NCBI RefSeq assembly: GCF_001194135.2
Contig: NC_068982.1
Location: forward strand, 114,708,026-114,772,025
Length of the DNA: 64,000 bases
Direction: 5' to 3'
Origin: Octopus bimaculoides
Taxonomy: Eukaryota
Made by a program: the position numbers and the translations under genes
In this document: positions 24,887 through 64,000 of the stretch, in pieces
How the letters are laid out: every line of letters begins with the position of its first letter
How positions within the stretch are numbered: position 1 is the stretch's first letter
Notes under the pieces: model-generated
What the model was told of the DNA's origin: nothing
The model's database searches: none
Seen by the model: the letters and a program-made list of their open reading frames with translations, nothing else

Positions 24887-24921
<35 letters not shown>

Positions 24922-25163: not shown

Positions 25164-25208
<45 letters not shown>

Positions 25209-25216
25209 TGTGTGTG

Positions 25217-25262
<46 letters not shown>

Positions 25263-25435
25263 TATGTGTGTGTATCACTGGGTGTATACATATATATATA
25301 TATNNNNNNNNNNNNNNNNNNNNNNNNNNNNNTATATATACACATATATATATATATATGTATATCATATATATATATATATACATATATGTCTATATAT
25401 ACATATATGTACGTATATATATCCATATATACATA

Positions 25436-25475
<40 letters not shown>

Positions 25476-29423: not shown

Positions 29424-29984
29424 ATAGATAGCGTAAGATCAGAAGTAGTAAATTAACCAAACGTGGAGTAGACCGCTAGCTACTTTTCAAGCCAAGGATA
29501 CCTTGATTATATCAAGTTTACATTGTCGTTAGGAAATTCCATGTAAACTCATTGGGGATTCGATCGAATGAAGGACAATCACGCAATATCACTGTATGTA
29601 ATAATGCAAACAACAAAACCACCATAGATCAAGAACCTTTTAACAAGTTCAACTTTACGAGAATGAAGAACAACACAAAACAACAAGACCACAAGATATA
29701 AGATTCACAGACAAAAAGCATATCAGTCATATATTTTCATCACTAGCTGCCTAACAGATATTACTATGATTTCGATACACATGTATGCATATGCATAGTT
29801 AGATCACTTTATAAAGGTATGTGTATGCATTTGAGGATGAGTGGATATGCATATGAGTGAACTGAAGTATGCATGCATATGTATAGTTGTAATATATATG
29901 TGTGTGTATTTGTATAACATATATTTGTGTACATTTTGTGGGTATACATACATTTGTATATACACAAATATATAAACATATATA

Positions 29985-30853
29985 CGTAGTCTGATCAATA
30001 AGTATTCGGACTGTTGCCATAGTAACGAAGCTAAAACACGCAGAGTGAGGCTGCTTGGCACAAATTGACCTTAAACCCTCATGTGCATGCGCACTAAGTT
30101 TTAACCTTCTAGCTCACTTCTGCTGTTTACAGCAGTGCTTGGAAGGAAGTTGTGTAACGTGTGATTGTTGCATTGACCACGACAAAATTGAGAAGAAAAT
30201 CTGCATCAAATTTTGCCAAAAGCTTTGCAATACCTACTCAGAGACCTTCCCAAAATTTTCAAAAAGTTTTCAGCATTCTCGACACAATCAAGGAGATCTT
30301 GTGCAGCTGAAACCCGAGCGTCTTTTTGGTCAGCTGAAAGCAGTTTGGCACAAACTTGGCGTCTCATACCCAAATCTTCACTGATAATGGACTGAAATGA
30401 ACCGTAACTAATCTGCACATCCTCTGATAACTCATGGATAGTGATTAGACGATTTCCCCTCACAGCTGCACGCACATCTGCGATGTTTTTCTCAGTTCTG
30501 CTGGTTGTGGATCGTCACTATCGACATTTTTTCGGTCATCTTGGAAACGTCTGAACCACTCGTACACTTGTGTGCGTCTCATACACCCTTCTCTATGCAC
30601 TTTCTGCAACTTTGCGTAGGTCTCTGAGCAGGTATCGCCATGACAACTTTCTCTGTCATGGTGAATGCAACGATCACACGCTACACACCTTCCTCCCAAG
30701 CACTACTGCAAACAGCGGAAGTGGGCTAAAATGTTAAAACTTAGTGCGCATGTACAACACTGTTCAGGGTCAATCTTTGCCAAGCGGCTTTACTCTGCGT
30801 GCTTTAGCTTCGTTACTATGGCAACAGTCTGGATACTTATTGATCAGACCTCA
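29985..30853. mobile_element. non-autonomous mariner derivative built from two 5' ends in inverted orientation
   Basis: TA on both flanks (29983-84, 30854-55). About 200-bp inverted arms starting CG(T/A)(A/G)GTCTGATCAATAAGTAT. Transposase N-terminal HTH fragments (...TQVYEWFRRFQD...; ...NRLITIHELSEDVQISYGS...LGMRRQVCAKLLS) on the minus strand, and IEKKICIKFCQKL on the plus strand. Confidence 0.85.
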
Positions 30854-30873
30854 TATGTATTTATACACGTATG

Positions 30874-30958
<85 letters not shown>

Positions 30959-30967
30959 GGAGAATTC

Positions 30968-31004
<37 letters not shown>

Positions 31005-35770: not shown

Positions 35771-36301
35771 GTAACCTACTACATTAGCCATGACTCACTA
35801 ATTTAGCTAAATAGGTGCAAGGGACGGTCCGGCCTTGAAGCCTATACTTTTTTTTTTTCTGTGCCTCACTTTTTTATGTATAATGTGTTTGTCATTTTAC
35901 AAACACAAGGGCCGCTCTAAACAGCATAAACACTCCTTGTGACACTGAAGTGATAATCTCGTCTTTTTAATGATCTCTAAGATAGNNNNNNNNNNNNNNN
36001 NNNNNNNNNNNNNNNNNNNNNNNNNNNNNNNNNNNNNNNNNNNNNNNNNNNNNNNNNNNNNNNNNNNNNNNNNNNNNNNNNNNNNNNNNNNNNNNNNNNN
36101 NNNNNNNNNNNNNNNNNNNNNNNNNNNNNNNNNNNNNNNNNNNNNNNNNNNNNNNNNNNNNNNNNNNNNNNNNNNNNNNNNNNNNNNNNNNNNNNNNNNN
36201 NNNNNNNNNNNNNNNNNNNNNNNNNNNNNNNNNNNNNNNNNNNNNNNNNNNNNNNNNNNNNNNNNNNNNNNTTTTATTTGCTTTTTTCATTTTAAATTTG
36301 C

Positions 36302-37519: not shown

Positions 37520-38420
37520 AAATAGGTTTCTTTATTAGCCACACAGGGCTCAACACAGAGGGGACAAAATACAAATGTAGAGTTTTTCTTTTCGAGGGGA
37601 TCGAAAACAAAGCAGAAAAAAAACAAAAGTGGGGACAACGATGAAAAAAAACATCGCAAAACGTTTGGGGTATTTACAAAAAATACGAAATAATACAAAA
37701 AATTCCCAATAAATGGGGAGGTTATCCGTGGAAAGAAAAACCTACGAAAAGACCACGGTAACCTCGGTCTTTAGCGTCACAGTTTGTTAAATAAAATTTC
37801 TTTTATTTAAGCAAGAAACGTGAGTAACTCTCTGTTTACAAAATTTTAAAACGTTTTATNNNNNNNNNNNNNNNNNNNNNNNNNNNNNNNNNNNNNNNNN
37901 NNNNNNNNNNNNNNNNNNNNNNNNNNNNNNNNNNNNNNNNNNNNNNNNNNNNNNNNNNNNNNNNNNNNNNNNNNNNNNNNNNNNNNNNNNNNNNNNNNNN
38001 NNNNNNNNNNNNNNNNNNNNNNNNNNNNNNNNNNNNNNNNNNNNNNNNNNNNNNNNNNNNNNNNNNNNNNNNNNNNNNNNNNNNNNNNNNNNNCACCAGA
38101 TGCATTCTTTGGCCATAGCCACAAGTACGATAAATACAGCTCTTCCTTCCCGTTTAAAGGAAGGAGGCGTGACGATATTGACGATAGACTCGGTTGATAA
38201 ACCGACTCGTCCCACACGCGACAGCAGTCGTTCGACATAAGCCCACAGCTCCGAAATGGTTGGACACTGCACGAGTGCGTGCAGAACGGTTTCATCGCTC
38301 TGACCGCATCTCGGGCAGGTCGGCCCCGCATTTCGCGAGCCGTGTCTATAGAGCTTATCCCGAACGGGTAGCGCCTCTCGAGGTGAAATAACGACTTATT
38401 GTACATAGAACCCTCTTTCT
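37520..38420 (-). mobile_element. 5'-truncated Tx1/L1-clade LINE (ORF2 C-terminal zinc knuckle plus 3' UTR), spanning a gap
   Basis: Minus strand REALPVRDKLYRHG...CPRCGQSDETVLHALVQCPTISELWAYV (C-x2-C-x7-H-x3-C, zf-RVT type). The 3' end has AATAAAGAAACC near 37530. Confidence 0.8.
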
Positions 38421-47235: not shown

Positions 47236-48166
47236 TATTGTTGAGCAGCAGGTCAGCTTGATTGATCAGACCTATGATCAAAGGTTTCCATCCAGGACCA
47301 TCAGGTATGTTTTTTTAAGACAGTGTATCTAGAAATGCATTATCCAATGTGTCCTTCCTTGGAGAGACAATAGGAAGGTGTATGATTTGATGCCAAAACA
47401 GACAATTGGAGCCTGGTGCTACTCACCAGCTGGCCAGCTCCTGTCAAACCGTCCAACCCATGCCAGCATGGAAAATAGATTTTAAATGATAATGATGATA
47501 ATGATGTATAATGACCTGTAGAGATATATTTGTACTGAGAAATAATAAATCTTTAATTTTACAAATTCATAGTTATGCAACTTGTATTAAATTACTGTTT
47601 TGAATCTTAAGGATTAAACTAGGTGAGGGTGTTAATGAGTTTCTATAGACTTCACATAACAGGTCCTTTAAATTTGAATGTTGACAGGATTTTGCTTTCA
47701 ATTAAGAGGCTCTCACATAGAAACTTGACATAGAAACTTGACATAGAAACTCCATTGTTGGTTCAAAGTAAATATTAATCAGACTATTAACTTCATTTTT
47801 TCAGGTGGTACCACAATATTTTTGACATGCACACTTCTTTCAATTCATATTTCATCCACACTCTTTCACATAATTCAAAGTCTCTTATTGAAAGTAAATG
47901 TCAAAGCATTAAATATAATATTAACCAAAAACCCCAATGAAAATACTCAAGCATAAATTTAAAACCTACTATGACTGCAATGTGATGATTCCTCAACACA
48001 AAATATAAAGTGTGGCACCTGAAGATGATCAGAAAATATGCCAACCAACAGGTAAACAAATACTGAAAAAATTGTTATGAATAGTCTGATTATGAATCTT
48101 TAAAATGTAGAAATATAAATTAAATTTAAAAAATGACATTAAGAAACACAGAAATGTGTAACAAAT

Positions 48167-48172
48167 TTTATT
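48167..48172 (-). promoter_or_regulatory. candidate SELENOF polyadenylation signal
   Basis: Minus-strand AATAAA followed by a T/GT-rich tract (TTTCTGTGTTTCTT), about 400 nt after the stop and downstream of the SECIS. Confidence 0.55.
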
Positions 48173-48349
48173 AATAATCCATGTGACCAGAAATAAATAT
48201 AAGAAAATTACATATCATGAAATACTATTAAAAAAAGAAAATTCATGATAAAAATAAATGGAATATTATATTCTTATTTAGTACCCACAATGATGGATTT
48301 AAGAGAGAAAAGATATAAAAATAGGCAGCTCTGAAATTCAAGTAATTGC

Positions 48350-48416
48350 TTTCTCATTTTGTATCCAACCTTACAACCTTAAATTAAGTTTTTAGTAAGA
48401 TTTTCATAGAGAGAAA
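48350..48416 (-). promoter_or_regulatory. SECIS element (type II-like) in the SELENOF 3' UTR
   Basis: Minus strand TTTCTC-TCT-ATGA-A-AATCTTAC-T-AAAAA-CTTA-ATT-TAAG-GTT-GTAAGGTT-GGAT-ACAAAAT-GAGAAA. Helix I is TTTCTC/GAGAAA, the core is ATGAA/GGAT, helix II is AATCTTAC/GTAAGGTT, with apical A run and mini-stem. Confidence 0.75.
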
Positions 48417-48576
48417 TCATTTACTAAAATGCTAATATTTTACGACCAGACCAGCCAACTGTAACATTAAGTATATGTGGTAGATGGTAAACTTTGAGAT
48501 TACCAAACTAGTCAGCAATATTAGCTACTTTGAATAGCAGAGCTGGTGAATAGATGCTTTGTGTTTTTTTGCATTT

Positions 48577-48755
48577 TTACTTCATTAAACGTTCATGAAA
48601 GAAGGCCTCCACAGAATCAGTGTTCCACTTCTCAATTCCTAGGGTTTCGACTATTTCTCTGTTCTCATTTAACAAATGGATAGTCGGATCAGCACCACGT
48701 GTGTACTTAATTTTAAGACCTGGAAATTGTTGTGTACGAGCGCTTTTCACAAAAG
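48577..48755 (-). CDS. SELENOF: selenoprotein F (Sep15), last coding exon
   Basis: Acceptor TTTGTCATTTCAG, phase 1. Reads (A)FVKSARTQQFPGLKIKYTRGADPTIHLLNENREIVETLGIEKWNTDSVEAFFHERLMK*, matching vertebrate AFVRSDKPKLFRGLQIKYVRGSDPVLKLLDD...LSILKWNTDSVEEFLSEKL. Confidence 0.95.
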
Positions 48756-49557
48756 CTGAAATGACAAATGAAATGATTCAGTAATTTTGTTAAGAAAATT
48801 AAACCAGACTTCTGTAATTCATTAGTTCTTAAAGTAATTATAAGTTAATTCACACAGTTATTCATCCTCATAAAATATTGTAACATTGCTTTTTAAGAGA
48901 CTGAGTTACAAAATTATATAATAAATATATATATATATATATATATATANNNNNNNNNNNNNNNNNNNNNNNNNNNNNNNNNNNNNNNNNNNNNNNNNNN
49001 NNNNNNNNNNNNNNNNNNNNNNNNNNNNNNNNNNNNNNNNNNNNNNNNNNNNNNNNNNNNNNNNNNNNNNNNNNNNNNNNNNNNNNNNNNNNNNNNNNNN
49101 NNNNNNNNNNNNNNNNNNNNNNNNNNNNNNNNNNNNNNNNNNNNNNNNNNNNNNNNNNNNNNNNNNNNNNNNNNNNNNNNNNNNNNNNNNNNNNNNNNNN
49201 NNNNNNNNNNNNNATATATATATATATATACCTAATATGAAATCTACATAAAGATACCATTACTGTTCTTATAAATAAGTTTAATTAATCTATAAGCTTA
49301 AATATTTAACATCATCTTATAGAAGATTTTAACATAAACAACTTTATAGATTATTTAGATGATTTCTTATTTAAAGAGTCTGTAATTAAATATCTTCAAC
49401 ATGGATGGAGTAATACATTCCATTAATGGAAGTTTTTGGTGATAAAATCAAATAAACAGACTAAAATGTTAAGTGTAAACAGCCAGAGTAGCTAATGCAA
49501 CAACACTCTATAAAAAATTCCTCCAGAACAACAAGGAAATTCTTGAGTTTGACTTAC

Positions 49558-49621
49558 CTTGAACCTGTGGATACCTTCCTAATTTTCATCCGCATACAAT
49601 TAGTTCAGCATAGGGATACAT
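49558..49621 (-). CDS. SELENOF: selenoprotein F (Sep15), Sec-containing exon (64 nt)
   Basis: Acceptor TTTTGTTATATTTCAAAG, donor AAG|GTAAGT. Reads MYPYAELIVCG-TGA-KLGRYPQVQ, the CxU motif of Sep15 (human LYAGAILEVCGUKLGRFPQVQ). Splices in frame to 48755. Confidence 0.95.
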
Positions 49622-49876
49622 CTTTGAAATATAACAAAAACATAACAAAACTTTTAAGTAAAGATAATATCAAAAATATTTGATACAGGTTAAATTTATT
49701 TAATCAACAGCTATATACAGATTAAGTTCCAACAAAAATGGAGGCTTAAACATATCTAAGTGACATTTATGTTTTTTGATATCCATAATAAAAACCAAGC
49801 AAATATCAATGGATAACTTCTCTGCAACTAACAGAGTACTACATAAAAGTTGCTGTAACAGACTGAATAACATATT

Positions 49877-49931
<55 letters not shown>

Positions 49932-50906
49932 ATGCATCTCCATTACTACCATAGGCAGTAATGGAGATAAACACAGGTAAGCCTGATATAAATATATTTA
50001 CATGTAGCACAAAATAAATACAGAATAAGGTAAGGTAATATGTAATTTCATAACTCAACAGTTGTTTCAGGAAACCTAGATTTACATGATAATCATGATA
50101 ATCATAAATTGCAGATGAAATGCACAAAAAGTCATGGGTATGTAACCTGTAACTAGTCACATGAAGAAATTACAATAAGTCCAGTTCTCCTCATCAAGAG
50201 AAGATGTAACCCATGCCAGATGGAAAAGTGAACACAAATTGCTGCTGCTGCTGGTGGCCATCAATTTTGCATTGTATGCATGTATGTATAGACAGGCAGT
50301 CACATTCCTAGATATCACAGAATGAGTGGTATATTCTATAATCATCAATATCAAAGTTTTATATCCACTTTACCATCAGGCTCAAGTTGGGCAGTTTTAC
50401 TCAAGTAGTGTTTTAGAGTCAGATACCACTCTTGATGCAACCCTTTTCATCACTTCTTACAGTATATAGGAATGTGATATGTCTATTCTAAAACAAGCAT
50501 AACACACTGTAACTGAAAATTCTATAAAATTGAATTAATTGTTGATTATCTCAAAAAACTTATTGATTTGAGAAGCTACAGACAATGCTAGAGAACTCTA
50601 GCTCTGTATCATATATGTTTAATGCTGTCAGATACCAATACATGTCTGATGTTGAATACTTGTACACTTTGATGCTAAAAACTACTTTTAATGTTAGATA
50701 TTACATAACTATACATACATTTGATATTAAACATCTGAACACTTTGATGTTATTTAATAACTACCATTATCGTCATTGTTTCACATCTGTTTTCCATGCT
50801 GGCATGAGTTGGACTAACAATATTTGATGCTAAATACCTGTACACTGTATTTGAAGTTAGAAAAACCTTTACCCTTTCACGTTAAATACTAATATATATA
50901 CATATA

Positions 50907-52097
50907 CAGTGTGTCCCAAAAAATGTATACACACTTTATTCCTTTTCAGATTTACCCCATTTGAAATAATGATGGAAACTAAACTAAGCTTTGAACAAAG
51001 GAAATTTATCCAAAAGTGTTTCTGGAAGTTGAAAAACACAGTCCAAGTACAAAAATGGTTTAGGTGGGAATTTCAAACAGATCTGCCGAAGTAGCTTACC
51101 ACTAATTGAATTACAGATAGATTTGAAACAGATGGAACTATTTAGAATGTCCACAAGAAACATTCCAGAAGACCATGGATATTAATGAGCCTGACAAAGC
51201 AAGAAAGGGTACTAGAAACATACTGCCAGAGTTCAAGAAAATCTGTGTGGCAAGTGAGTTGTGAGATAGGAACTGTACCTTGAAATACAGTCATTGGAAA
51301 AGTGACATTCCAAGAATAATCTAAGATCTCAATGAAAATGGTCCAAATCAAAGACAGTTGTTTTGCAAGTTGTATTTGGCAAGATGTGTAGACGATGCAC
51401 ATTTTCCAACAAAGACTGTTTGGAGTGATGAGGCTACATACAAATTAAATGGCTTGATTAACTGCCACAGTTGTACCTATTGGGGACCCAAGGAACCACA
51501 TACTAAGGAGGAACATCATGTAAATTTACCAGTAGTTACATAATAGTGATGCTTATCATTAAAAGGATTAATTGGCCCATTCTTTTTGGTGGCACTGTGA
51601 CTGAATATCATGCCAAGTCTTCAAGAGGACTTAGAAGATGTGGAGTTTTATTTTGAATAAGACAGGATACACCAACACTACAATTGTAATGTAAGGGCTT
51701 ATCGTGATGAGGCTTTGCTAAACAGGTGGATCAGACAAAGCAATTCAGATGAATACCCGCCACAGTTGCCAGACCTCACATCACTAGACTTTTTTCTATG
51801 GGGATACTTAGATGATAAAATTTATTGTACAAAACTAGCAACACTCAATGAACTGAAGACAGCCACTGAATGAGAATGCACATAAATACCAAACAAAATG
51901 TTTCTTGATATTTGCAATTCCATTGTTTCATGTTACCAGCAGTGCCTGGACCAGAATGGACATCACTTTGAAAACAGGTGATCATAAAAAAAAAATTCTG
52001 TTTGTAGATTCTATTAAATTTTGAAACTGAACTCTATTTTAATAAGCACTGACTTTTATATCATTCTATGTGTATACATTTTTGAGGGGATACCCTG
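50907..52097 (+). mobile_element. defective IS630-Tc1-mariner element, DD41D (rosa-like)
   Basis: TA flanks (50905-06, 52098-99). TIRs CAGTGTGTCCCAAAAAATGTATACACA / CAGGGTATCCCCTCAAAAATGTATACACA. Motifs [12 protein letters not shown] and PDLTSLDFFLWGYL. 41 codons lie between the Asp at 51661 and the Asp at 51787. Stops and frameshifts elsewhere. Confidence 0.85.
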
Positions 52098-53239
52098 TAT
52101 ATATAATGATGATGATGATATTTGATGTTAAATACTTGTACACTTTTAAGTTATTAAATGGTATTTTTTTAATGTCAAATGTGAAATCATTATGTAACTA
52201 CAAATATTGATGTTATTAGATAAGTACACATGTTTGATGTTATGATGATCAGATCCCAAATGGAGTCTTTATCGATGGGAGAAGTGAATATCTAACAGAA
52301 GCAGTTGATAGTCAACTAAAATTTCAAAGATTGACTACATCCACCAGCAAAACCGCAATACAAAACAGTATATAAAATATAAGTAAAAAATATTTGTTCA
52401 TATACTGTATAGTCTCTAAGTTGAAATCCCATCAGACTTAGTTTTGTGTTTCACTCTACTAGAGATGATATGTAGCAGTAGCATAAAGAGGTTGATTCAA
52501 ATAACAATAAATACTTCATTCAACAATTCATCTTAACTTAAGGAAGAAATTAATATGTGTAAATTTTACTTTATCTTATATATTAATTACATGCAAAAGC
52601 AAAACATTTAATCATTATATGAAATCTTAGGGAACAGTGTACTATTTTGGGAATAATAGTTTGGCCACATTTGTCATGTTGGATTTTACAACTGATATTA
52701 TCATCATCACAATTTTATATGTGCTTTTTTATGCTGGCATGAATTTGGGGTTTTCCTGCGGCACAGTTTTACAGCTAGATGCACTTCTTGTTGCCCACCC
52801 TTACAATATGCATGGACACTGTGTACCTATTCTAAAACCACAGTAAGCTATTACTAAACAGAGTAATAAAAACTCAAATACAATAAGTCCTTTACAAAAG
52901 AATACATTAGTTTGCATCTATTAGTTCAGAAGATAATTCTAGGTCTAAACTAGGATGACCTACATTTCATTGATACAGATACAAACAAAAATGTGAACAG
53001 TTAGAATATCTTCTGCAGTGTGTCAGTCAGTACATCATCACATTAAACACCAAAATAGTTTCTGAATTTCCAGACTACAAGTTGTGATATCTCAAGCATC
53101 CTGGTATCTATTTTAACTAATGTTAGGTTAAACTTGGTAGCTTGTAAAACTTCCAGAATGGTTCATGTAAGAAAAAGTGAGTAAATATACAGTTAGAGTC
53201 TTTTCTTCAATTATTTAGGAATATTTCTCAAATTGAGAA

Positions 53240-53371
53240 TTTCCAAAAATTGCACCTAACCTGTACCCTCCGGGTACAGTGGTGCGCTCAATTATTAATT
53301 GCAGGTGTCAGCAGTCTTGCCCTCAGTAAACCCTCCTTGAGCAAGCTCCCAACCCCCTGACGAGGACGGTT
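53240..53371 (-). ncRNA. RNU4ATAC: U4atac minor-spliceosomal snRNA
   Basis: 5' AACCGTCCTCGTCAGGGGG (human AACCATCCTTTTCTTGGGG). K-turn stem-loop CTTGCTC-AAG-GA-GG-GTTTA-CT-GA-GGGCAAG. TGAGGGCAAGACTGCTGACACCTG (human TGAGGGCAGTACTGCTAACGCCTG). 3' stem-loop GCACC/CTGTACCC-GGA-GGGTACAG/GGTGC. Sm site AATTTTTGG (human GGTGCAATTTTTGGAAA). About 132 nt; the exact 3' end is uncertain. Confidence 0.9.
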
Positions 53372-54682
53372 AACTATATTTTGTCGTATTCTAATATATA
53401 CACTGAGCAAAATGTACATTTGTAGGTATTGACTAACGGAGTAGTCATCGCCATTAATGTACAGCGAAATATTGCGCTTAACAAATTATATCAACTTAAT
53501 TTAAAGAACATAATTAATCATTTTCGTAGATGTAACGTTTTGAATTAAACTGAAAAATAATTATTTAAGACTTTTTTCTGAAAGTTTACTTAAAAATATT
53601 ATTATTACTTCCCTTGACACGACACTTCCGCTTAATATGGGTTTCCTCCCTTAGCTTAGAATTTCTAAGAAATATTTATTCCACGTATTAATTTTCCACG
53701 TATTAATTTTCTCTCTCTCTCTCCGTCTCTCTCCACACACACATTCCTTCACACTTATTCTATCCCGCCCTTCTCGTTAACTGCCTGCTAAAATCATATA
53801 AATATTTATCGAGATGTTATATGAATGTACGTCACTCGGAAATTTGGCTGCGGCATTACGTGTTGTATATTCATACCCACCACCGCGATTCATTACATAT
53901 CTTAGTCAAATCACTTAATTCTACATGCCTTACTAATAAACTTAGTTGTTGTTGTTTAGTCCCATGTCAGCTCTGATCAAAAGGCATTAGAGCCGTGACA
54001 ACCACATTATGTTTTTTCACCTCCGTCGGACAAAATGTATTGCAATATTTGTTCTAGTTCAATACGTTCCGAGATCAACTTCATCCTTATGGAGGCCGGG
54101 GCAATAAAATAGAGTACCAGTTAAGTACTTGAGCTGAAGGTATTGATTAACCCGTCGTTTCAAAATTGATGGCCCGGTGCCTAAAATAGAAACATTGAAG
54201 ACGGTAGGGGGTGATCTAAGGGTTATCTGTCTGCTTTTTCTAGCAAATAGATAGAGCAGTTTTGAAATGACTTTTTTTATTTGATTTTTTATTTTTTTAT
54301 TTACTTATTTTGATTTTCCTGATTTTCATACAAATATAAATCATGGTTCTGGAAAAAAATTTAGTTAATGTTTACTTTAACTACCGGTCACCAAAACAAA
54401 CAAAAAAAACGAGTGTAATAGGTGTAAAAAAAAATGTGTATTAAACGAATGTGAAAACAAAAATTTGCGCCAACGAACGGGGGGGGGCGGAGAAAGGATT
54501 TTCGGAAAATTCGCAAGATCCGATTTTTCCCCTCATAACTTTTAGGAAAATGGATATCTTCTAGTGAAATTTTAAATAAATACCTTTCAAACGGCATAGA
54601 TTACGATTATAAAGAACGGGATGCTACAAATCAATATGACATATAATTTAAATTTTAATATATGTTCACGACATAATTTTCG

Positions 54683-54700
<18 letters not shown>
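53372..54700. promoter_or_regulatory. CpG-retaining region upstream of U4atac (candidate promoter)
   Basis: CpGs are frequent here but sparse in the flanks (by eye). CACTTCCG (ETS-like) at 53623-30, CCCGCCC at 53764-70, TACGTCA at 53828-34, and ATGGCG about 80 nt upstream of the snRNA start. Confidence 0.45.
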
Positions 54701-54723
<23 letters not shown>

Positions 54724-54827
54724 GAAGAAGAATGGAACGAACGAAACTGTTTATAATAAATATCATGCATGCTCTCATTGATATGCTAATTTTAGTACAT
54801 GCTTTTTGTGTGTTTGCACATATATAT

Positions 54828-55540
54828 NNNNNNNNNNNNNNNNNNNNNNNNNNNNNNNNNNNNNNNNNNNNNNNNNNNNNNNNNNNNNNNNNNNNNNNNN
54901 NNNNNNNNNNNNNNNNNNNNNNNNNNNNNNNNNNNNNNNNNNNNNNNNNNNNNNNNNNNNNNNNNNNNNNNNNNNNNNNNNNNNNNNNNNNNNNNNNNNN
55001 NNNNNNNNNNNNNNNNNNNNNNNNNNNNNNNNNNNNNNNNNNNNNNNNNNNNNNNNNNNNNNNNNNNNNNNNNNNNNNNNNNNNNNNNNNNNNNNNNNNN
55101 NNNNNNNNNNNNNNNNNNNNNNNNNNNNNNNNNNNNNNNNNNNNNNNNNNNNNNNNNNNNNNNNNNNNNNNNNNNNNNNNNNNNNNNNNNNNNNNNNNNN
55201 NNNNNNNNNNNNNNNNNNNNNNNNNNNNNNNNNNNNNNNNNNNNNNNNNNNNNNNNNNNNNNNNNNNNNNNNNNNNNNNNNNNNNNNNNNNNNNNNNNNN
55301 NNNNNNNNNNNNNNNNNNNNNNNNNNNNNNNNNNNNNNNNNNNNNNNNNNNNNNNNNNNNNNNNNNNNNNNNNNNNNNNNNNNNNNNNNNNNNNNNNNNN
55401 NNNNNNNNNNNNNNNNNNNNNNNNNNNNNNNNNNNNNNNNNNNNNNNNNNNNNNNNNNNNNNNNNNNNNNNNNNNNNNNNNNNNNNNNNNNNNNNNNNNN
55501 NNNNNNNNNNNNNNNNNNNNNNNNNNNNNNNNNNNNNNNN
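54828..55540. other. assembly gap (713 N)
   Basis: Direct reading. One possible hiding place for the missing 5' SELENOF exons. Confidence 0.99.
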
Positions 55541-55848
55541 GCCTGTGTTAGAATGGGGGCAGCTGATGAAGGAAAATGTTCTCTATGTGGCCTGTGTGTT
55601 TTCTGTACTCTGGTTATTATTATTTTTTTTGTCTACGTTTTGTTTGCAATGTCCTGTACCCAGATATGCACCTATATATACAGGTAGATGTAGGTATGCA
55701 CATACTTGTACGTATATATGCATATACTCATTTATATTTGTTTTATATATATATATAGACAGAGAGAGAGAGATTTGCATTATGAAAATGCTACCACTCC
55801 TTAAAAATCTGGCCTTATAATAAATGAAAATAAATTAATACTCTATAA

Positions 55849-56209
55849 CAGTGGTTCTCAACCATATCTTACCTGTAGAACCCTTTGATTACGGTTTTAC
55901 TCAGGTAGACCCCCTACAGCCAATTAATGTTTAAAAACTAATTTTATAGACACTTCTTTCAAAATTCCTATTTTGTTTACCACATGTTCACTTGTGCAGG
56001 TTTGCAATAGCACTCTCCAAGGGAACATGTTGAACTTTGTGGAGCGTTAAAAAAAGAAACCTAATTGTTTTGCTTTTTTTTATGGGGGGGGTGTAATAAA
56101 TACGTGTAAGGCAAAATTTTTTTCTTTGATCCCTAAAATACAACTGCAAACCCCCAAAAAATATTATATGAACCCTCAGGGCTTATATGGTGCCTTGTTA
56201 AGACCACAG
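55849..56209. mobile_element. hAT-type MITE
   Basis: Starts CAGTGGTTCTCAACC and ends ...GTTAAGACCACAG. 8-bp TSD CTCTATAA (55841-48) / CTCTATAC (56210-17). Confidence 0.75.
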
Positions 56210-56877
56210 CTCTATACAGTAATTACACTCTGAGTTCAAATCCTGCTAGGATCAACTTTTCCTTTCATTCTTCTAGGGTACAAATAAGCATAAATCAAGT
56301 ACTATGATCAATTCAATCAACTTTTCCCTTGCCTCTTAATTTGCAGCCTCAACATGATAAAGAGCTACAGAATAACTGCTTATAGTATCTGCAGAGAACT
56401 AGTTTAGTAATCAGACTAGTAAAAAATGACAGCTGCATCAAAAATTTAGCTAAGGGAGCACTCTAAATAGTTGCTCATCCTTGTAAAAATAACAGCCATT
56501 CTCTTCAAATCCCACCTTACTGTGTTAAAAAAAATGAAAGGGCATACTGCACAATATAGTTCTACATATAAAAAGACAGGAAGGTCATGGATGAAATGCC
56601 TTGGATAACAGATCTACTCAATGATCAGGAGTTGGTACAGAAAATTTTAACTCTAAACCCTCTATTTGTAATTAAGCTTATATTTCTTATTAACTGAGAG
56701 CATACAACATACATGGCCAATCTGAATCATCAGGGAATTTTTTAGCAGCATGATATATTTGAGTTGGGGTTTAAATGCTGCATAGCTTGTCACTAAATTT
56801 TTCTGTAATATTTATTGAAGTTACAAACAATTACATGGAAAAATGCAAGCATGAAAAGTCATATTCTTAAGATTATA

Positions 56878-57298
56878 AACATGGAAAAGGACAGGACAAG
56901 TTATTACACCTGTAAAAGTATAGGACAAGCTATTACTTCTAGTAAAGTAAAGATTAAGAAACTTTTTACTTAAAATATCGCAGCAAAGAATGCCAGTTCT
57001 AATTTATCACTCTTTACAGCTCTCATCATTAAAATTTATTGTACAAAACTGTTCAGCTAATTTCTAAGTTTGTCTAATTAGTCACTTTTTTCTGTATTTA
57101 AGGTAGTAAATTAACCAAATTCTACTTGAATAAGTATAGTGTTATTTGTAAACTATAATAAAATAAATTTTAATATTCAAATTTTAATTTTAGCTGCAAT
57201 ATTTTAAGTAAAAGTTTCTTATTCTTTACTTTACTTGAAGTAATAGCTTGTCCTATACTTTTACAGGTGTAATAACTTGACCTGTACTTTTCCAGGTT
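56878..57298. mobile_element. TA-flanked MITE with about 107-bp inverted arms
   Basis: AACATGGAAAAGGACAGGACAAGTTATTACACCTGTAAAAGTATAGGACAAGCTATTACTTC... (56878-56984) is the reverse complement of 57193-57298. TA at 56876-77 and 57299-300. Confidence 0.75.
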
Positions 57299-59800
57299 TA
57301 CATGGCTTGCACAGCTCTCACTAACCATTCATCTATCCCTAGTTTCCTCATTGACCACCAGATAAGGGATTGGGGGACCCTGTCAAAGGCTTTTTCCATA
57401 TCAACGAAAGCCAGATACAGAGGTTTATCCTTGGCTAGGTATTTCTCCTGCAGTTGTCTTACCAGAAATATAGCATCAGTGGTGCTTTTCCCTGGCACGA
57501 ACCCAAACTGCATCTCATCTAAACTGATTCGTTCCCTAATTAGTTGAGCTATGACCCTCTCCGTGACTTTCATTACCTGATCCAACAACTTGATACCTCT
57601 GTAATTATTTGTATCTAAAGCGTCACCTTTACCTTTGTAGCAGTTGACAATGGTGCTGCTACACCAGTCATTGGGTATGACTCCTTCATGTATCACCTGG
57701 TTAACTATACGGGTGACTAGGCTATAGCCAATAGACAGATATTTTGAGCATCTCTGCAGTGATTCCTGATGGGCCGGAGGCTTTCTCTGTCTTCATACTC
57801 TTGATTGCTTTATCTACCAAGGTACTGTCAATTCGGATAGCTGGTCCCTCTGTTGGGTCGACATTCGGCAGACTCTTTCTCCCATTCATTCTCTTTATTG
57901 AGCAACCTTTCATAGTAATGTCTCCAAACCTCTCTCTCTCTCTTTGCAGCCTTGTTTAGTGCAAGTGAACCATCATCCATGCAGACACATTTCTCTCCAA
58001 CATCACGATTCCCTCTCACACACTGTCTTGCAACACAAAATACTCAAGTCTTTGGTCCTCACAGCACAGAACATTGGCAAATTTTTTCTTATCTGCTTCC
58101 CCTCTAGCTGAATAAACCTGTCTCCTAGCTTCCCTTCTGGCAGTCTGATACAATTCCCTGCTACCACCGTTCTTCCAATCCTTCCAAGCCTGTTTCTTTT
58201 GTCAAATAGCCCTATCAACAACAATGTTCCACCACCACATTATTTTGGGTCGAGAGGGGACTTTGCATCATCCACAGAGCTGCTCAGTGGCCCTCAGCAG
58301 GTTGTCCTGTAGAAACATCTAATTTTCTTCCACATCGTGTGAAGTTATATCCCCTTCTATTTCATCAAAGGCTTCGAGTAATACATCTCTAAATCTCTGT
58401 CCATTCGCAGGATCTTTAAGCTTCCAGACCCTTCTCCTCCATGCTGGTCCTCTTCTGGGCATCCATTTAGCCCTGATCCTGACATTGCTAACTACCAGTC
58501 TATGTTGTGGGATACATTTTTCGCCTGGGAAGGTTTTGGCATTTATAAGTAGCCGTTTTCCCCTTTTTCTGGTGAGGATGTAGTCAATTTGGCTAAGTGT
58601 GTCTGCCAGAACAGTAGGTGACTAGGTGACTGGCAGGTTTCCTGAAGTTAGTATTGCAAACCATAAGATCATTTGCATCGCAGAACTCCAGCAGCCTGGT
58701 AGCCTCCATGTACACCATGGAAGCCCCCTGTATGTTATCCAACATGTCCAATGAAGTCACCAGCCACAAAGAGGAGGTCCCTGTCATTCGTCAACGAGGT
58801 AGTCTGCAAGAGGGTGTCATAAAATCGGTCCTTCTGTCCATCAGGTAGCCCCGGCTGAGGGGAACAGGCCGAGATAATGTTTGCTAACCCATGATGAAGC
58901 ACTAATCTAATCTTAAGTACTCTGTCACATACTCTGACTACCTCGATTACCTTATCAACTCATTTCTCAGCATGAAGTATACGCACGTCCCTGACTCCGT
59001 CAGTGTTCTTTGCCCAGAAAATCTTGTACCTGTGTTTTTTGCCTGTGAGGAACCTAGCAGAACCTCCTCTCCACCTTACTTCTAGGATGCAGCACAAATC
59101 GACACATCTCCGTTCAAGCATCTCAAAAATCTCACCAGACCTACTTTTCAGTGTGCCGACGTTGAGAGTACCAACCCTGAGGGTGTAGGAGGTATGGGCC
59201 TATGAGACCCTGGGACAGGGGACAGCAGCATCATGTACCTGAATAGAAAGCTCACATTTGGCAGAATTCATAAACAAACAATAGCCTTCATTTCAACCTG
59301 CATACACTACACCATCATATCTATGCACTATATGATCACTACCTTACATAGGAGATAAACCCTAAGTAGGGGTGGGGATGGCATAAAGGCTTTAGAAGTG
59401 TGCATGGGAGACAACCAAAGAATGACACAGGATAGGAACTTCCAGTACAGGTGGAGGGGGTCAGAGGGTCGGTGGGCGGGCGTACTATGAACTAACAAAT
59501 TTAGACGGGAGCATCTTCTGGATACGTATTCTTTCGGCGGAGGTATTAAAAATCGAGTAGGGGAATCCAAGTGCATGCACTAGTTTATATAGGATAGGGG
59601 TGGGGGAAGTCTTGGCGAAGCAAGTGGTAATCGAAAGAGAGACAGATAGACAGACAGAGTGAGGCCGAGAGAGAGAGAGACAGACAGAGTGAGGCCGAGA
59701 GACAGTGAGGCAAAGAGAGAGAGGGGGTACCAGAGTTAGGGTGGTCAGAACACGAGGGAGAAAAATATTCTTTTGGGATTTGGGTAGCATAATTTAAAGA
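57299..59800 (-). mobile_element. RTE-clade LINE, 5' part (5' region, APE endonuclease, start of RT), defective
   Basis: TLRVGTLNVGTL (EN start, ~59170); ...CNTNFRKPASHLVTY; NYRGIKLLDQVMKVTERV...FGFVPGKSTTDAIF...AFVDMEKAFDRVP. Contains frameshifts. The 5' boundary is approximate. Confidence 0.85.
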
Positions 59801-60559
59801 AACAGCAAATGTCAATAATAGTAAAATAGAATTGAAAAAAAAGTTTTCAGTCAGCCAATCTATAACAAAATTTGAGAAATAAGTGACTGTGTGATAAACT
59901 TGAATGAATGAATATGTGGTGGTTAAGGATATGATGAACTAAGGTTATCTTCAGGCAACAACAAGGATGACGAAACTATATTTACATATTTACATGGTAA
60001 TGAAATAGAAGAGTAGATGAACAAGGTTGAAAAGACAAAATTTCTTATCTGAGCATCTTCTGAGATTCGTATCCTTTCACATATATATATATGTATATAC
60101 ATACATATATATATAATATACATACATATATATATATATATATANNNNNNNNNNNNNNNNNNNNNNNNNNNNNNNNNNNNNNNNNNNNNNNNNNNNNNNN
60201 NNNNNNNNNNNNNNNNNNNNNNNNNNNNNNNNNNNNNNNNNNNNGGAAATGTATAACTGCTGTCATTCACAGAAAAACTATTGTTTTACTGTGAAAAAAG
60301 TGCTGTTGAAGTGTTAAGTGAAATTTATCGATCAAGGATCAAATCCACAGTATGCCTGCATGAAACCACAACAAATACATTGTGGAATAAAAAATTTATC
60401 TACTATCATGGAAAAAGTGTAACTGTAAAAATGCAGAATTATTGGAGTAATAGGCATTCAAAAAAGTATGTATGTATAGAAATGTATAAATGAAATCTTT
60501 AAGGTTTAAGATTCAAATTAAGGAAGTGCAATAATAATAATACAGTTCTATATTTAAGA

Positions 60560-60680
60560 GATGAGGAATTATGTACATTATTTACAAGTGACGGATATTT
60601 GTCCTCATCTTGTTTGTTGTTAACACAACGTTTCGGCTGATATACCCTCCAGCCTTCATCAGGTGTCTTGGGAAATTTTG
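60560..60680 (-). mobile_element. Penelope-like terminal repeat relic with hammerhead-like core
   Basis: Minus strand CTGATGA-A-GGCTG-GAGGGTATAT-CAGCC-GAAAC at 60662-60630. Confidence 0.4.
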
Positions 60681-60689
60681 CACCAGGCT

Positions 60690-63300
60690 CCAATCTGAGC
60701 TGGCAATATTTCTACAGCTGGATGTTCTTCCTAACGCCAATCACTAAGAGTGTAGTGGGTGCTTTTTACGTGTCAGTGGCACAGAAGCCAGTCAAGGGGT
60801 ACTGGCATTGGCCACATTCGGATGGTGCTTTTTGCATACCACTGGCACAGGGGCCAATCAGGCGGTCTTGACATCAATCCTGTTCAGATAATGGTATTTA
60901 TGTGCCACCGGCACGGGAGCCAGTCAGGGGATACTGGCCACAGCTATGATATTGGTTTTATTTGACTCAACAGGTCTTCTCAAGCGTATCATATCACCCG
61001 ACACATCGTGTACACTTAACTGGGCCAGATAAACATGGCTGCAATCTCACTTTAGTTGCCGAGTCTTCTCAAGCTCAGCATATCTCCAAAGTTCTCGGTC
61101 TCCGGTCATTTCCTCTGTGAGGCCCAATGTTCAAAGGTCATGCTTCAACACCTCATCCCATGTCTTCCTGGGTCTACCTCTTCGATAGGTTCCTTCCACA
61201 GTTAGGGAGTGGCACTTCCTCACACAGCTGTCCTCATCCGTGCGTAACACACGACCATACCAGCGCAGTTGTCTCTTGCACACCACATTTGATGCTTCTT
61301 GTGCCCAACTTTTCTCTCAGGGCACTTACACTCTGTCGTGTATGCACACTGACATTGCACATCCAGCAGAGCATATTAGCTTCATTTCTTTCAAGCCCAT
61401 GCATGTCTTCAGCAGTCATGGCCCATTTTTTACTGACATGTAGCATGACTGTTTGCATGCAGGCATCATACAGTCTACCTTTCATCCTGAGCAAGAGGCC
61501 CTTAGTTGCCAGCAGACATAAAAGCTCCCTGAACTTTGCCCAGACTATTCTTATTCTAGCCGCTACACTCTCAGAGCAACCACCCCCACTACAAACTTGG
61601 TCGCCTAGGTCGTGGAAGCTATTAATTACTTCCAGTTTCTCCACCAAGCATATAATGGAATCTGTTTTCTGTACAACTTCAGTGTTTATTGCCCCTGTGC
61701 ATCTGTTACACACAAAAACTATCTTCCCATTTAACCTTCCTTTGATATTGCTGCACCTTTTATTTGTCCATAGCTTACACCGAGTACACCGTATGGAGTT
61801 TCTACCCACGCCTTTTCTACAGATCGAACAGAGCCATCTACCTGAAGGGGTTTGTGATTTGACAGCCTTCCTACTTACTAAGACTTTGGTTTTTGCTAGG
61901 TTAACCCTAAGGCCCTTCACTTCTAGACCTTGCTTCCACACCCTAAACTTCGTCTCTAGTTCTGGCAATGACTCAGCTATTAGAGTAAGGTCATCAGTAT
62001 AGAGAAGCTCCCAGGGGCAGCCTGTCTTGAATTCCTGTTATTGCCTAGAAGACTATGATGAATAAGAGTGGGGATGACTATACTCATTACCAACCCTCAC
62101 CTTACTGACAACATCCCTCTATCTCTAGTTTCTGCATTGACCACCAGATAAGGGATCAGGGGACTCTGTCAAAGGCTTTCTCCAAGTCAACAAAAGCCAA
62201 ATACAGAGGTTTATCTTTTGCTAATTGTCTTACCAGAAATACAGCATCAGTGGTGCTTCTGCTTTGCACAAAACTAAACTGCATCTCATCTAGGCTAAGT
62301 CTCTCCCTAATTAGTTGGGCTATGACTCTGTAACTGTCATCACTTGATCCAATAATTTGATACCCCTGTAGTTATTGCTATCTAAAGCATCGCGTTTACC
62401 CTCATAGCAGTTGATTATGGTGCTGCTACACCAGTCATTGGGTATCACTCCTTCATGAACTACCTGATTTACAACATGACCATAACCCACACCACCCAAT
62501 ATTTTAAGCATCTCAGCGGCGACTTCTGATGAGCCAGGTGCTTTCTCTGTCTTCATATCCTTAATTGCTTTATCTACCAGGGTACTGTCGATTTGGATAG
62601 CTGGTCCCTCAACTGGGTCAACATTTGGCAGACTCTCCTCCTCCCATTCATTCTCTATATTCAGCAGTCTTTCATATAATGGCATCTCCAAGCCTCTTTC
62701 TTTGCAGAATCATTAAACGCAAGGGCACCATCATCCATGCAGACACACTTCTCTCCTATAACATCACAGTTTTCTCTCAAACACTGTCTTGCAATCCGAA
62801 ATACTTCAGTTCTTTAGTCATCACATCGCTAGACATTGGCAAACTTCTTTTCTGCTTCTCCCTTAGCTATGTATACCTGTCGCCCAGCCTCCCTTCTGGC
62901 TACCTGGTACAGTTCCCTGCTACCCCCACTCTTCCAGGCTTTCCAGGTGCCTAGTCCCCTCTTCATTTCTGGTACCAATTTCATGGCCCCCATGTACACC
63001 ATGGGAGATATCAGGTTGCTGTCCAACATGCCCATTAAAATCTCCAGCTACAAAGATAAGATCATTGTCACTCGTCTTTGAGGTAGCCTGCAGAAGAATA
63101 TCATAAAAGTGATCCTTCTGTTCATTTGGTAGGCCCGCTTGTTGGGTGTAGGCAGAGATAATTGTAGTAATATCATTCTGCAAGACCAGCCTGAGTTTAA
63201 GTACTCTATTGCACACCCTCACTACCTCTATGACCTTATCCACCCATTTCTCTGCAAGAAGTATGCCCACACCCCCTATTCCATCACTATTACCTTCCCT
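60690..63300 (-). mobile_element. RTE-clade LINE, internally deleted (EN part, RT pieces, PHD-like finger, C-terminus, 3' UTR)
   Basis: GVGILLAEKWVDKV...AGDFNGHVG; NYRGIKLLDQV; LLYTDDLTL; KGLRVNLAKTKV...CSIC...CTRC...CNRC; ARIRIVWAKFRELL. The 3' UTR equals family C. Confidence 0.85.
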
Positions 63301-63611
63301 GTACATATATATATATATATATATATATTTATTACTTATATATATGCATCTTAAAACAATTCATTGAGAGCTGTACCAAGTCAGCTATCATAAAATCTCC
63401 ATATCAACCAATAAGAGGGAAATTTTAGGTAAAACACTATAAAATAAATTACTCAATGAACACTGAGAAATTCCTGAGGTAGATCCAGCGACAAATGTGT
63501 AAATACTGTGGATGACATCAGGTAGTCATAGGCAGTGAACGTGTTTCATCAGCTAACTACTAGGAACATACTCAATACTTAAATAATTATTTATCTATTT
63601 TACATATATAT

Positions 63612-64000
63612 GGGTTCGTGCCAGGTAAAAGCACCACTGATGCCATATTTCTGGTGAGACAGCTGCAGGAGAAATATCTAGCCACGGATAAACCTCTGTA
63701 CCTGGCCTTCGTTGACATGGAGAAAGCCTTTGACAGGGTCCCCCGATCCCTTATCTGGTGGTCAATGAGGAAACTTGGGATAGAAGAATGGTTAGTGAGA
63801 GCTGTGCGAGCCATGTACAGAGATGCTGTCAGTAAGGTGAAGGTTGGAAATGAGTACCGTAATGAATTCCGGGTAGAGGTAGGGGTCCACCAAGGTTCCG
63901 TCCTCAGCCCCCTCCTATTTATCATAGTCCTCCAGGCGATCACAGAGGAATTCAAGACAGGTTGCCCCTGGGAGCTCCTCTATGCTGATGACCTTGCACT
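63612..64000 (+). mobile_element. RTE-clade LINE, RT domain, uninterrupted to the window edge (5'-truncated)
   Basis: GFVPGKSTTDAIFLVRQLQEKY...AFVDMEKAFDRVP...GVHQGSVLSPLLF...ELLYADDLA with no stops. Opposite orientation to the two neighbouring RTE copies. Confidence 0.9.

What the first reader, a model, noticed from the sequence alone, without database searches (positions are those of the whole stretch)
48350..48416. SECIS element that licenses the in-frame UGA
Seen: ATGAA/GGAT non-Watson-Crick core, 8-bp helix II (AATCTTAC/GTAAGGTT), A run starting 10 nt after ATGA, apical mini-stem CTTA/TAAG, and helix I TTTCTC/GAGAAA. It lies about 160 nt after the stop on the coding strand. Established: this is the eukaryotic SECIS architecture bound by SBP2, and the type II form occurs in vertebrate SEP15. 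Helix II is somewhat shorter than the usual 11-12 bp and very AU-rich, so efficiency might be low.
Basis: partly seen in the sequence, partly recalled or inferred. Interest (0 to 1): 0.7.

Follow-up and report, generated by a model that had tools for sequence, protein, structure and literature searches.

The report
SECIS element of an octopus-like SELENOF gene
This is a genuine but ordinary selenocysteine-insertion hairpin. It sits in the 3' untranslated region of a selenoprotein F (Sep15) gene and lets the ribosome read the gene's in-frame UGA as selenocysteine.

Summary
On the minus strand, 48416-48350 folds as a type II eukaryotic SECIS. It has helix I, an AUGA/GA core, a helix II register of 11 positions (9 paired), an A-run bulge and a 4-bp mini-stem.

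It starts 160 nt after the TAA stop of the last exon of a SELENOF/Sep15 gene. The preceding exon carries TGA at the family's conserved Sec position (VCG-U-KLGRYPQVQ).

Rfam SECIS_1 scores it 32.6 bits, just under the gathering score of 35. It is the only SECIS_1 match in the 64 kb on either strand, and orthologous SELENOF SECIS elements score 22.9-43.1.

The closest relative's RNA contigs (L005/L006) carry the same element (43.1 bits) as a conserved island in an otherwise unalignable 3' UTR. One mini-stem pair shows a compensatory A-U to C-G change.

Across 12 SELENOF SECIS elements, all 11 helix II pairs covary (85.7% paired against 35-41% for slid controls).

Coding sequence after the UGA is under purifying selection (dN/dS about 0.10).

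Helix II keeps the family's spacing, so it is not short in that sense. It is AU-rich, and its efficiency was not tested.

This is a known kind of element where one would expect it, so interest is low.

The parts
48350..48416 (-). Complete SECIS element (helix I to helix I)
   Evidence: Rfam SECIS_1 matches 48351-48415, model positions 1-64 of 64, 32.6 bits. My SELENOF-SECIS model R1 matches 48360-48417 at 45.5 bits. The MFE fold reproduces the stem-loop.
48411..48416 (-). Helix I, 5' arm (UUUCUC)
   Evidence: Pairs with 48355-48350 in the Rfam alignment and in the MFE fold. UUCUC/GAGAA is identical in L005.
48350..48355 (-). Helix I, 3' arm (GAGAAA)
   Evidence: As for the 5' arm. The fold extends helix I outward with bulges to about 48430/48336 in the window, and similarly in L005.
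48404..48407 (-). AUGA, 5' half of the non-Watson-Crick core quartet
   Evidence: Read directly. ATGA is present in 11 of 12 aligned SELENOF SECIS elements; L009 has TTGA.
48363..48366 (-). GGAU, 3' half of the core (GA at 48365-48364)
   Evidence: Read directly. GA is invariant in alignments A1/A2.
48393..48403 (-). Helix II, 5' strand (11 positions; contiguous pairs 48402-48395)
   Evidence: 9 of 11 positions pair with 48376-48366. The same columns covary in 12 SELENOF SECIS elements.
48366..48376 (-). Helix II, 3' strand
   Evidence: All differences from L005 in this helix are G-U/A-U swaps or lie at the helix ends.
48389..48393 (-). A-run holding the conserved unpaired AAR motif (A48393 may pair with U48376)
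   Evidence: AAA/AAAA occupies the same alignment columns in all 12 sequences.
48378..48388 (-). Type II mini-stem CUUA/UAAG with a 3-nt AUU loop
   Evidence: The C-G closing pair is present in 12 of 12 sequences. The fourth pair is A-U here and C-G in L005, a compensatory change.
48326..48349 (-). Conserved 3' flank of the SECIS (GCAAUUACUUGAAUUUCAGAGCUG)
   Evidence: The BLASTN block between the window and L005 runs 48415-48326 (76.6% over 94 nt). The rest of the 3' UTR does not align. Part of this flank forms the extension of helix I.
48417..48576 (-). 3' UTR spacer between the stop codon and the SECIS (160 nt)
   Evidence: Read directly. Not alignable with L005.
48577..48755 (-). Last coding exon of SELENOF (..AFVKSARTQQFPGLKIKYTRGADPTIHLLNENREIVETLGIEKWNTDSVEAFFHERLMK, stop TAA 48579-48577)
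   Evidence: tblastn against Sep15 sequences, 54-77% identity. The acceptor AG is at 48757-48756. Pfam Sep15_SelM scores 96.2 bits.
49558..49621 (-). Sec-encoding exon (MYPYAELIVCG-U-KLGRYPQVQ); in-frame TGA at 49588-49586
   Evidence: The TGA aligns with the Sec/TGA of every orthologue. The acceptor AG is at 49623-49622 and the donor GT at 49557-49556.
48167..48172 (-). First canonical AATAAA downstream of the SECIS (candidate poly(A) signal, inferred only)
   Evidence: Pattern search. No transcript data exist for this species.

Best explanation
The stem-loop at 48416-48350 (minus strand) is the functional type II SECIS element of a selenoprotein F (SELENOF/Sep15) mRNA.

Proposed mechanism: in the mRNA the element lies about 367 nt after the UGA codon (49588-49586) and 160 nt after the TAA stop. 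The AUGA/GA tandem sheared pairs form a kink-turn. SBP2 binds the kink-turn and recruits eEFSec with Sec-tRNA(Sec). The ribosome then inserts selenocysteine at the UGA of the CGU redox motif instead of terminating.

Shown here:
- the sequence and fold anatomy;
- the location and strand;
- uniqueness in the window;
- conservation and covariation with orthologous elements;
- purifying selection on the reading frame after the UGA.

Inferred from established knowledge of eukaryotic Sec insertion: SBP2/eEFSec binding and actual Sec incorporation.
For: 1. Gene context. The two exons encode a Sep15/SelM redox domain (Pfam PF08806, 96.2 bits). TGA sits exactly where all orthologues have Sec/TGA. All 75 homologues found carry PF08806.

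2. Covariance model. Rfam SECIS_1 aligns full length (1-64 of 64) to 48351-48415 on the minus strand at 32.6 bits. It is the only SECIS_1 hit in the 64 kb at E<=10, with E=0.014 summed over 4227 families.

3. Chance. My pattern scan finds 1 hit in the window, against a mean of 0.1 per whole-window surrogate on both strands.

4. Orthologous element. L005/L006 RNA contigs carry a SECIS of 43.1 bits, above the gathering score. It aligns to 48415-48326 at 76.6% identity, while the flanking 3' UTR is unalignable. Synonymous sites in the coding sequence differ at pS=0.64.

5. Structure-preserving substitutions. Between the window and L005, CUUA/UAAG becomes CUUC/GAAG, and helix II shows G-U/A-U swaps.

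6. Family-wide covariation. In 12 SELENOF SECIS elements, 85.7% of cells are paired against 35-41% for slid controls. All 11 helix II pairs show double changes, and 0 of 500 shuffles reach the observed covariation.

7. Selection after the UGA. dN/dS is about 0.10 for the 68 codons after the UGA, so they are translated.

8. Type II definition. The element has an extra short helix (4 bp), an internal A bulge and a small apical loop. This matches the description in PMC13059024.
Against: - The Rfam score (32.6) is 2.4 bits under the curated gathering score (35), so the default scan does not report the element.
- The element is very AU-rich (26% GC). It has an A.G and a U.U in the helix II register.
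- No transcript from this species shows that the 3' UTR reaches it.
- The taxon of the only close relative is unknown.
- The N-terminal SELENOF exons are not in the window, so gene integrity cannot be fully verified.
- The covariation alignment was fitted to the model structure, and the window was among the training sequences of model R1.
Confidence: 0.93

Rival explanations
1. The element is a relic SECIS of an incomplete or pseudogenised SELENOF copy. The hairpin would be SECIS-derived, but the locus would no longer make a selenoprotein.
For: No exon for the signal peptide or the Cys-rich N-terminal domain was found anywhere in the window (tblastn; profile search of the six-frame translation). 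The relative's contigs L005/L006 also lack the N-terminal part and carry intron-like sequence with a U4atac gene instead. The assembly has gaps, one of them inside the intron at 48950-49213.
Against: - Both exons are intact, with AG/GT splice sites and no frameshift.
- dN/dS is 0.10 against a relative whose synonymous sites are near saturation.
- The SECIS is conserved well above the neutral level.
- Only about 14 kb lies upstream of the Sec exon in the window, and that stretch contains retrotransposon fragments and N-runs. The 5' exons may therefore simply lie outside the window.
Confidence: 0.04
2. The element is a chance AU-rich hairpin, and the real SECIS lies elsewhere or further downstream.
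For: The sequence is 26% GC in a 24% GC neighbourhood. AU-rich DNA forms many hairpins. A looser version of my scan found three other ATGA...GA hairpins in 48100-48650. The Rfam score is below the gathering score.
Against: - There is only one SECIS_1 hit in 128 kb of searched strand.
- The stricter pattern is expected 0.1 times per window.
- The relative's element above the gathering score aligns to exactly this site.
- No other candidate was found by Rfam or by model R1.
Confidence: 0.02
3. The element is a different kink-turn RNA, for example a C/D-box snoRNA embedded in the UTR.
For: Weak Rfam matches overlap or lie near the site: ceN113 at 48340-48426 (17.2 bits, E=4.5) and snR69 at 48510-48589 (18.9 bits, E=1.2).
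Against: The scores are far below the gathering scores (40 and 50) and the E-values are above 1. No C/D boxes with a terminal stem are present. The SECIS model explains every conserved position.
Confidence: 0.01

Closest known systems
Eukaryotic SECIS element, Rfam RF00031 (SECIS_1), type II / form 2
   Same: It has the AUGA...GA quartet, helix I plus an internal loop, and a helix II register of 11 positions. It also has unpaired A's followed by a short extra helix and a small apical loop. It lies in the 3' UTR downstream of an in-frame UGA.
   Different: It scores 2.4 bits under Rfam's gathering score. It is unusually AU-rich (26% GC). It has A.G next to the core and U.U near the top of helix II. 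Helix I continues outward in a long, bulged extension.
SELENOF (Sep15) SECIS elements of other invertebrates (loci L001, L005, L009, L012, L014, L015, L018-L021)
   Same: The spacing from ATGA to AAA is the same. The mini-stem is closed by the same C-G pair. The host gene and strand are the same. The sequence is nearly identical to L005.
   Different: The distance from the stop codon varies widely, from about 125 nt in L005 and 160 nt here to about 690 nt in L001. The mini-stem here starts CU rather than the commoner CC. One relative (L009) has UUGA instead of AUGA.
Vertebrate SEP15/SELENOF gene
   Same: It has the CxU redox motif with Sec encoded by TGA, a C-terminal Sep15/SelM domain (54% identity to the human sequence as I recalled it), and a single 3' UTR SECIS.
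   Different: The N-terminal UGGT-binding Cys-rich exons were not seen in the window. I did not check the SECIS type of vertebrate SEP15.

Membership tests
Eukaryotic SECIS element (Rfam RF00031) | Non-Watson-Crick core: 5' AUGA opposite 3' GA (tandem sheared G.A pairs) | tested here: met
   ATGA is at 48407-48404 and GA at 48365-48364. Rfam aligns both to the model's AUGA and GA. The sheared geometry itself is inferred.
Eukaryotic SECIS element (Rfam RF00031) | Helix II of fixed length separating the core from the conserved unpaired AAR motif | tested here: met
   The register is 11 positions, 9 of them paired, followed by AAAA. The columns are the same as in 11 other SELENOF SECIS elements.
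Eukaryotic SECIS element (Rfam RF00031) | Helix I below an internal loop that flanks the core | tested here: met
   UUUCUC pairs with GAGAAA, with loops of 3 and 7 nt. This appears in the Rfam alignment and in the MFE fold.
Eukaryotic SECIS element (Rfam RF00031) | Location in the 3' UTR, on the coding strand, of an mRNA with an in-frame UGA at a known Sec position | tested here: met
   The element starts 160 nt after the TAA of SELENOF. TGA at 49588-49586 aligns with Sec in all orthologues. That the 3' UTR extends this far is inferred, since no transcript is available for this species.
Eukaryotic SECIS element (Rfam RF00031) | Covariance-model score at or above the curated gathering score (a database cut-off, not a property of the RNA) | tested here: inconclusive
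   The score is 32.6 bits against 35, so the element is not reported at gathering. E=0.014 for the window across all 4227 families. Elements found in the 3' UTRs of orthologous SELENOF transcripts score 22.9, 24.7, 26.1, 30.4 and 43.1. The cut-off is therefore conservative for this gene family.
Eukaryotic SECIS element (Rfam RF00031) | Structure maintained in evolution (compensatory changes) | tested here: met
   85.7% of cells are paired against 35-41% for slid controls. 13 of 14 pairs show double changes, and 0 of 500 shuffles reach the observed covariation. Between the window and L005, a mini-stem A-U becomes C-G. Caveat: the alignment was fitted to the model.
Eukaryotic SECIS element (Rfam RF00031) | Binds SBP2 and supports Sec insertion at UGA | not testable with these tools
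   This needs an EMSA or a read-through/75Se assay. Indirect support comes from dN/dS of 0.10 downstream of the UGA.
Type II (form 2) SECIS | Additional short helix (2-7 bp) above an internal A bulge, with a small apical loop (definition as in PMC13059024) | tested here: met
   CUUA/UAAG forms 4 bp with a 3-nt loop, after AAAA. The same helix appears in the L005 MFE fold. The window's MFE fold prefers a one-base-shifted AACUU/AGGUU pairing that is not conserved in L005.
SELENOF / Sep15 (Pfam PF08806 Sep15_SelM) | Sep15/SelM thioredoxin-like redox domain with a CxU motif | tested here: met
   PF08806 scores 96.2 bits against a cut-off of 26. The motif C-G-TGA is present.
SELENOF / Sep15 (Pfam PF08806 Sep15_SelM) | N-terminal signal peptide and Cys-rich (UGGT-binding) domain, which distinguishes Sep15 from SelM | tested here: inconclusive
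   It was not found in the window. The exons probably lie beyond 64000 or in assembly gaps. The C-terminal part is 61-77% identical to Sep15 orthologues that do have this domain.

The most novel reading that the evidence does not exclude
The conserved island is larger than a canonical SECIS. It continues 3' to 48326 (AAUUUCAGAGCUG, shared with L005). The upstream intron also hosts a U4atac snRNA gene, which the relative's RNA contigs link directly to the Sec exon. The most novel reading not excluded has two parts. First, the 3' extension could be a separate regulatory element, for example a binding site that tunes Sec insertion or mRNA stability. Second, an alternative transcript reading through from the U4atac region could yield an N-terminally truncated SELENOF message in cephalopod-like lineages.
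Probability: 0.08. Interest if true: 0.35.

Novelty: new member of a known kind. Interest (0 to 1): 0.15.

Why it matters
The element confirms that the in-frame TGA at 49588-49586 is a selenocysteine codon and not a stop. The gene should therefore be annotated as a selenoprotein. Standard pipelines often get this wrong, and no annotated octopus protein turned up among the homologues.

It also gives a worked example of a true invertebrate SECIS falling just under Rfam's threshold. Orthologous SELENOF elements scored 22.9-43.1 bits. Scans run at the gathering score will therefore miss such elements, while gene context and comparative data recover them.

Beyond annotation, nothing here changes what is known about Sec insertion.

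Tried and rejected
- Rfam at gathering threshold reported only U4atac, not the SECIS. The E-value mode was needed.

- An exact look-up of the post-UGA ORF that a gene caller would predict (MKSARTQQ...LMK), intended to fetch other octopod contigs, found nothing on record.

- A paper search for the SRA run accessions of the relatives, intended to learn their taxa, returned no papers.

- A third protein search used a profile of N-terminal SELENOF halves to find cephalopod transcripts. None of the 17 unnamed hit sequences I inspected ended in the window's YPYAELIVCG or L005's YSYAELVVCG.

- The search for the N-terminal exons in the window by tblastn and by profile HMM on six-frame pieces found nothing. 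The best weak hit (44047-43955, E about 0.1) lies downstream of the gene. It lacks the conserved cysteines and splice sites, and I rejected it as noise.

- The window's MFE fold gives an alternative apex pairing, AACUU/AGGUU. I rejected it in favour of CUUA/UAAG because only the latter is kept in L005 and in the family alignment.

- snoRNA and miRNA matches around the site all had E>0.8 and scores far under the gathering scores.

- MAFFT could not align the 3' arms of helix I across distant relatives. Helix I was therefore left out of model R1 and of the covariation count.

- SECIS elements were not located in L007, L008, L017 or L022-L024. Those contigs may be too short or the elements too divergent.

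Full report
**Observation**

- Helix I is UUUCUC (48416-48411) with GAGAAA (48355-48350).
- AUGA is at 48407-48404, followed by A.
- Helix II is AAUCUUAC (48402-48395) with GUAAGGUU (48374-48367).
- An A-run lies at 48393-48389, beginning 10 nt after AUGA.
- The mini-stem is CUUA (48388-48385) with UAAG (48381-48378), around an AUU loop.
- GGAU is at 48366-48363.

The stop codon TAA of the upstream reading frame is at 48579-48577, so 160 nt separate it from helix I. The minimum-free-energy (MFE) fold of 48340-48426 reproduces the two-helix stem-loop (-17.4 kcal/mol, z = -2.98 against dinucleotide shuffles).

**Gene context**

tblastn with a Sep15 sequence, and later with eleven orthologous transcripts, finds two exons on the minus strand.
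- Exon 49621-49558 encodes MYPYAELIVCG-TGA-KLGRYPQVQ.
- Exon 48755-48577 encodes AFVKSARTQQFPGLKIKYTRGADPTIHLLNENREIVETLGIEKWNTDSVEAFFHERLMK-stop.

Splice signals are in place: AG at 49623-22, GT at 49557-56 and AG at 48757-56. The TGA (49588-49586) sits exactly where every orthologue has its Sec TGA. The joined peptide matches Pfam Sep15_SelM at 96.2 bits against a cut-off of 26. All 75 database homologues carry that domain.

In the spliced mRNA the SECIS begins about 367 nt after the UGA (28 + 179 + 160 nt). Mammalian selenoprotein mRNAs average 872 nt for this spacing (PMC3316567).

**Is it more than chance?**

At Rfam's gathering thresholds the window yields only a U4atac snRNA. With E-value reporting, SECIS_1 (RF00031) aligns over its full length to 48351-48415 on the minus strand at 32.6 bits. 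That is 2.4 bits under the gathering score of 35.

In a permissive scan of the entire window, this is the only SECIS_1 match on either strand up to E = 10. Its E-value of 0.014 is multiplied over 4227 families. For the single family I infer it to be about 3e-6.

An explicit pattern scan (ATGA, at least 9 of 11 helix II pairs, AAA, GA, helix I of at least 5 bp) hits only this site. First-order Markov surrogates of the whole window give a mean of 0.1 hits on both strands together.

**Comparative evidence**

I fetched RNA-like contigs encoding close SELENOF homologues. The nearest are L005/L006 (80% protein identity). They match the window in four collinear blocks:
- a U4atac gene;
- the Sec exon (87% nucleotide identity);
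- the last exon (76%);
- a 94-nt block covering the SECIS and its 3' flank (48415-48326, 76.6%).

The remainder of the 3' UTR does not align. In the same species pair, synonymous sites differ at pS = 0.64 and dN/dS after the UGA is about 0.10. The SECIS block is therefore conserved far above the neutral level, and the frame after the UGA is under protein-level selection.

The L005 element scores 43.1 bits with Rfam, above the gathering score. Its differences from the window preserve the structure. The mini-stem CUUA/UAAG becomes CUUC/GAAG, a double compensatory change. Two helix II pairs switch between A-U and G-U. The A.G next to the core becomes A-U. Both RNAs fold into the same shape with a long, bulged extension of helix I.

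**Family-wide structure**

I built a covariance model (R1) from eight SELENOF SECIS elements. It covers helix II and the mini-stem only, because MAFFT could not align the helix I 3' arms.

R1 found further elements that were not in its training set, L019 (43.3 bits) and L018 (27.8 bits). It found no second hit in the window.

On the 12-sequence alignment:
- 85.7% of cells form standard pairs, against 35-41% when partners are slid by 1-3 columns;
- all 11 helix II pairs show changes on both sides;
- none of 500 shuffles reaches the observed covariation.

The alignment is fitted to the model and the window was a training sequence, so these numbers lean towards the structure. The slid controls and the independent hits argue that the signal is real.

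The window's element occupies the same register as all the others. Eleven positions lie between AUGA and the A motif.

Rfam scores for the orthologous elements that were reported are 22.9, 24.7, 26.1, 30.4 and 43.1 bits. A sub-threshold 32.6 is therefore typical for this gene family.

**Mechanism**

The anatomy fits the published description of type II SECIS elements. That description specifies a core of AUGA opposite GA, a conserved AAR, an extra short helix of 2-7 bp, an internal bulge and a small apical loop (PMC13059024; PMC3316567).

The best-supported explanation is the standard one. The kink-turn core is bound by SBP2, which recruits eEFSec with Sec-tRNA(Sec). This recodes the UGA of the CGU motif as selenocysteine. 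These binding steps are inferred from established knowledge, and nothing here tests them.

**Rivals**

- Relic SECIS in a broken gene copy. The missing N-terminal exons favour this. The intact exons, the dN/dS of 0.10 and the presence of gaps and retrotransposon fragments in the upstream 14 kb argue against it.
- Chance hairpin. Uniqueness and orthologous conservation argue against it.
- snoRNA-like kink-turn RNA. Only noise-level matches support it.

**Organism and novelty**

A retrotransposon ORF at 61234-61968 has Octopus bimaculoides proteins as 5 of its 6 source-named relatives (68-78% identity); the sixth is a metagenome bin labelled Herbaspirillum. No octopus SELENOF protein appeared among the homologues. 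Full-text searches found no paper on cephalopod SECIS elements or selenoproteomes.

The element is therefore a new, probably unannotated member of a thoroughly known kind. Its value is in annotation: the TGA is Sec, and the gene is a selenoprotein. It also serves as a reminder that gathering-score scans miss real invertebrate SECIS elements.

Noticed in passing
window 53239-53370 (-); L005 251-379, L006 219-347: There is a full-length U4atac minor-spliceosomal snRNA gene (Rfam 83.3 bits, gathering 53). It is on the same strand as SELENOF, 3.6 kb upstream of the Sec exon. The closest relative's RNA contigs also carry a U4atac (70.7 bits), about 120 nt upstream of the Sec exon within one contig. 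The U4atac-SELENOF linkage is therefore conserved. Those contigs look like retained-intron or alternative-5' transcripts that lack the N-terminal domain.
   Followed up: partly
window 48326-48349 (-): Sequence conservation with L005 continues 3' of SECIS helix I (GCAAUUACUUGAAUUUCAGAGCUG). Part of it pairs as an extension of helix I. The terminal AAUUUCAGAGCUG has no assigned role.
   Followed up: partly
window 49622-64000 (-): The SELENOF exons for the signal peptide and the Cys-rich N-terminal domain were not found in the window by tblastn or by a profile search. They may lie beyond the window end or in assembly gaps.
   Followed up: yes
window 48950-49213 and ten other N-runs (1360-1430, 6270-6802, 10485-10567, 16722-17641, 25304-25332, 26638-26808, 35986-36271, 37860-38093, 54828-55540, 60145-60244): These are assembly gaps. 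One lies inside the intron between the Sec exon and the last exon, so the two exons are joined across a scaffold gap.
   Followed up: yes
window 3503-3604 (-): A U6 snRNA-like match scores 38.1 bits, below the gathering score of 44. It may be a divergent or decayed U6-family copy.
   Followed up: no
window 3086-3200 (both strands): A near-perfect palindromic hairpin matches the plant miRNA family MIR2593 equally on both strands (92.3 bits, gathering 96.2). It is more likely a MITE-like inverted repeat than a miRNA.
   Followed up: no
window 57298-63955 (-): There are fragments of a non-LTR retrotransposon (reverse transcriptase plus PHD-finger ORFs). Five of the six relatives that carry a source name are Octopus bimaculoides proteins at 68-78% identity, which hints at the source organism.
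   Followed up: partly
window about 1100-1500, 5700-6900, 9300-9600, 24900-25500, 29850-31000, 49870-49940, 55670-55750: Many (TG/TA)n-type simple repeats give spurious sub-threshold matches to mir-297, mir-466, mir-3149 and mir-1277.
   Followed up: no
L009 967-1007, and the same sequence in L010 and L011: The SELENOF SECIS of this marine metatranscriptome species appears to use UUGA instead of AUGA in the core. It has 12 of 12 helix II pairs, and model R1 gives it only 16.7 bits.
   Followed up: partly
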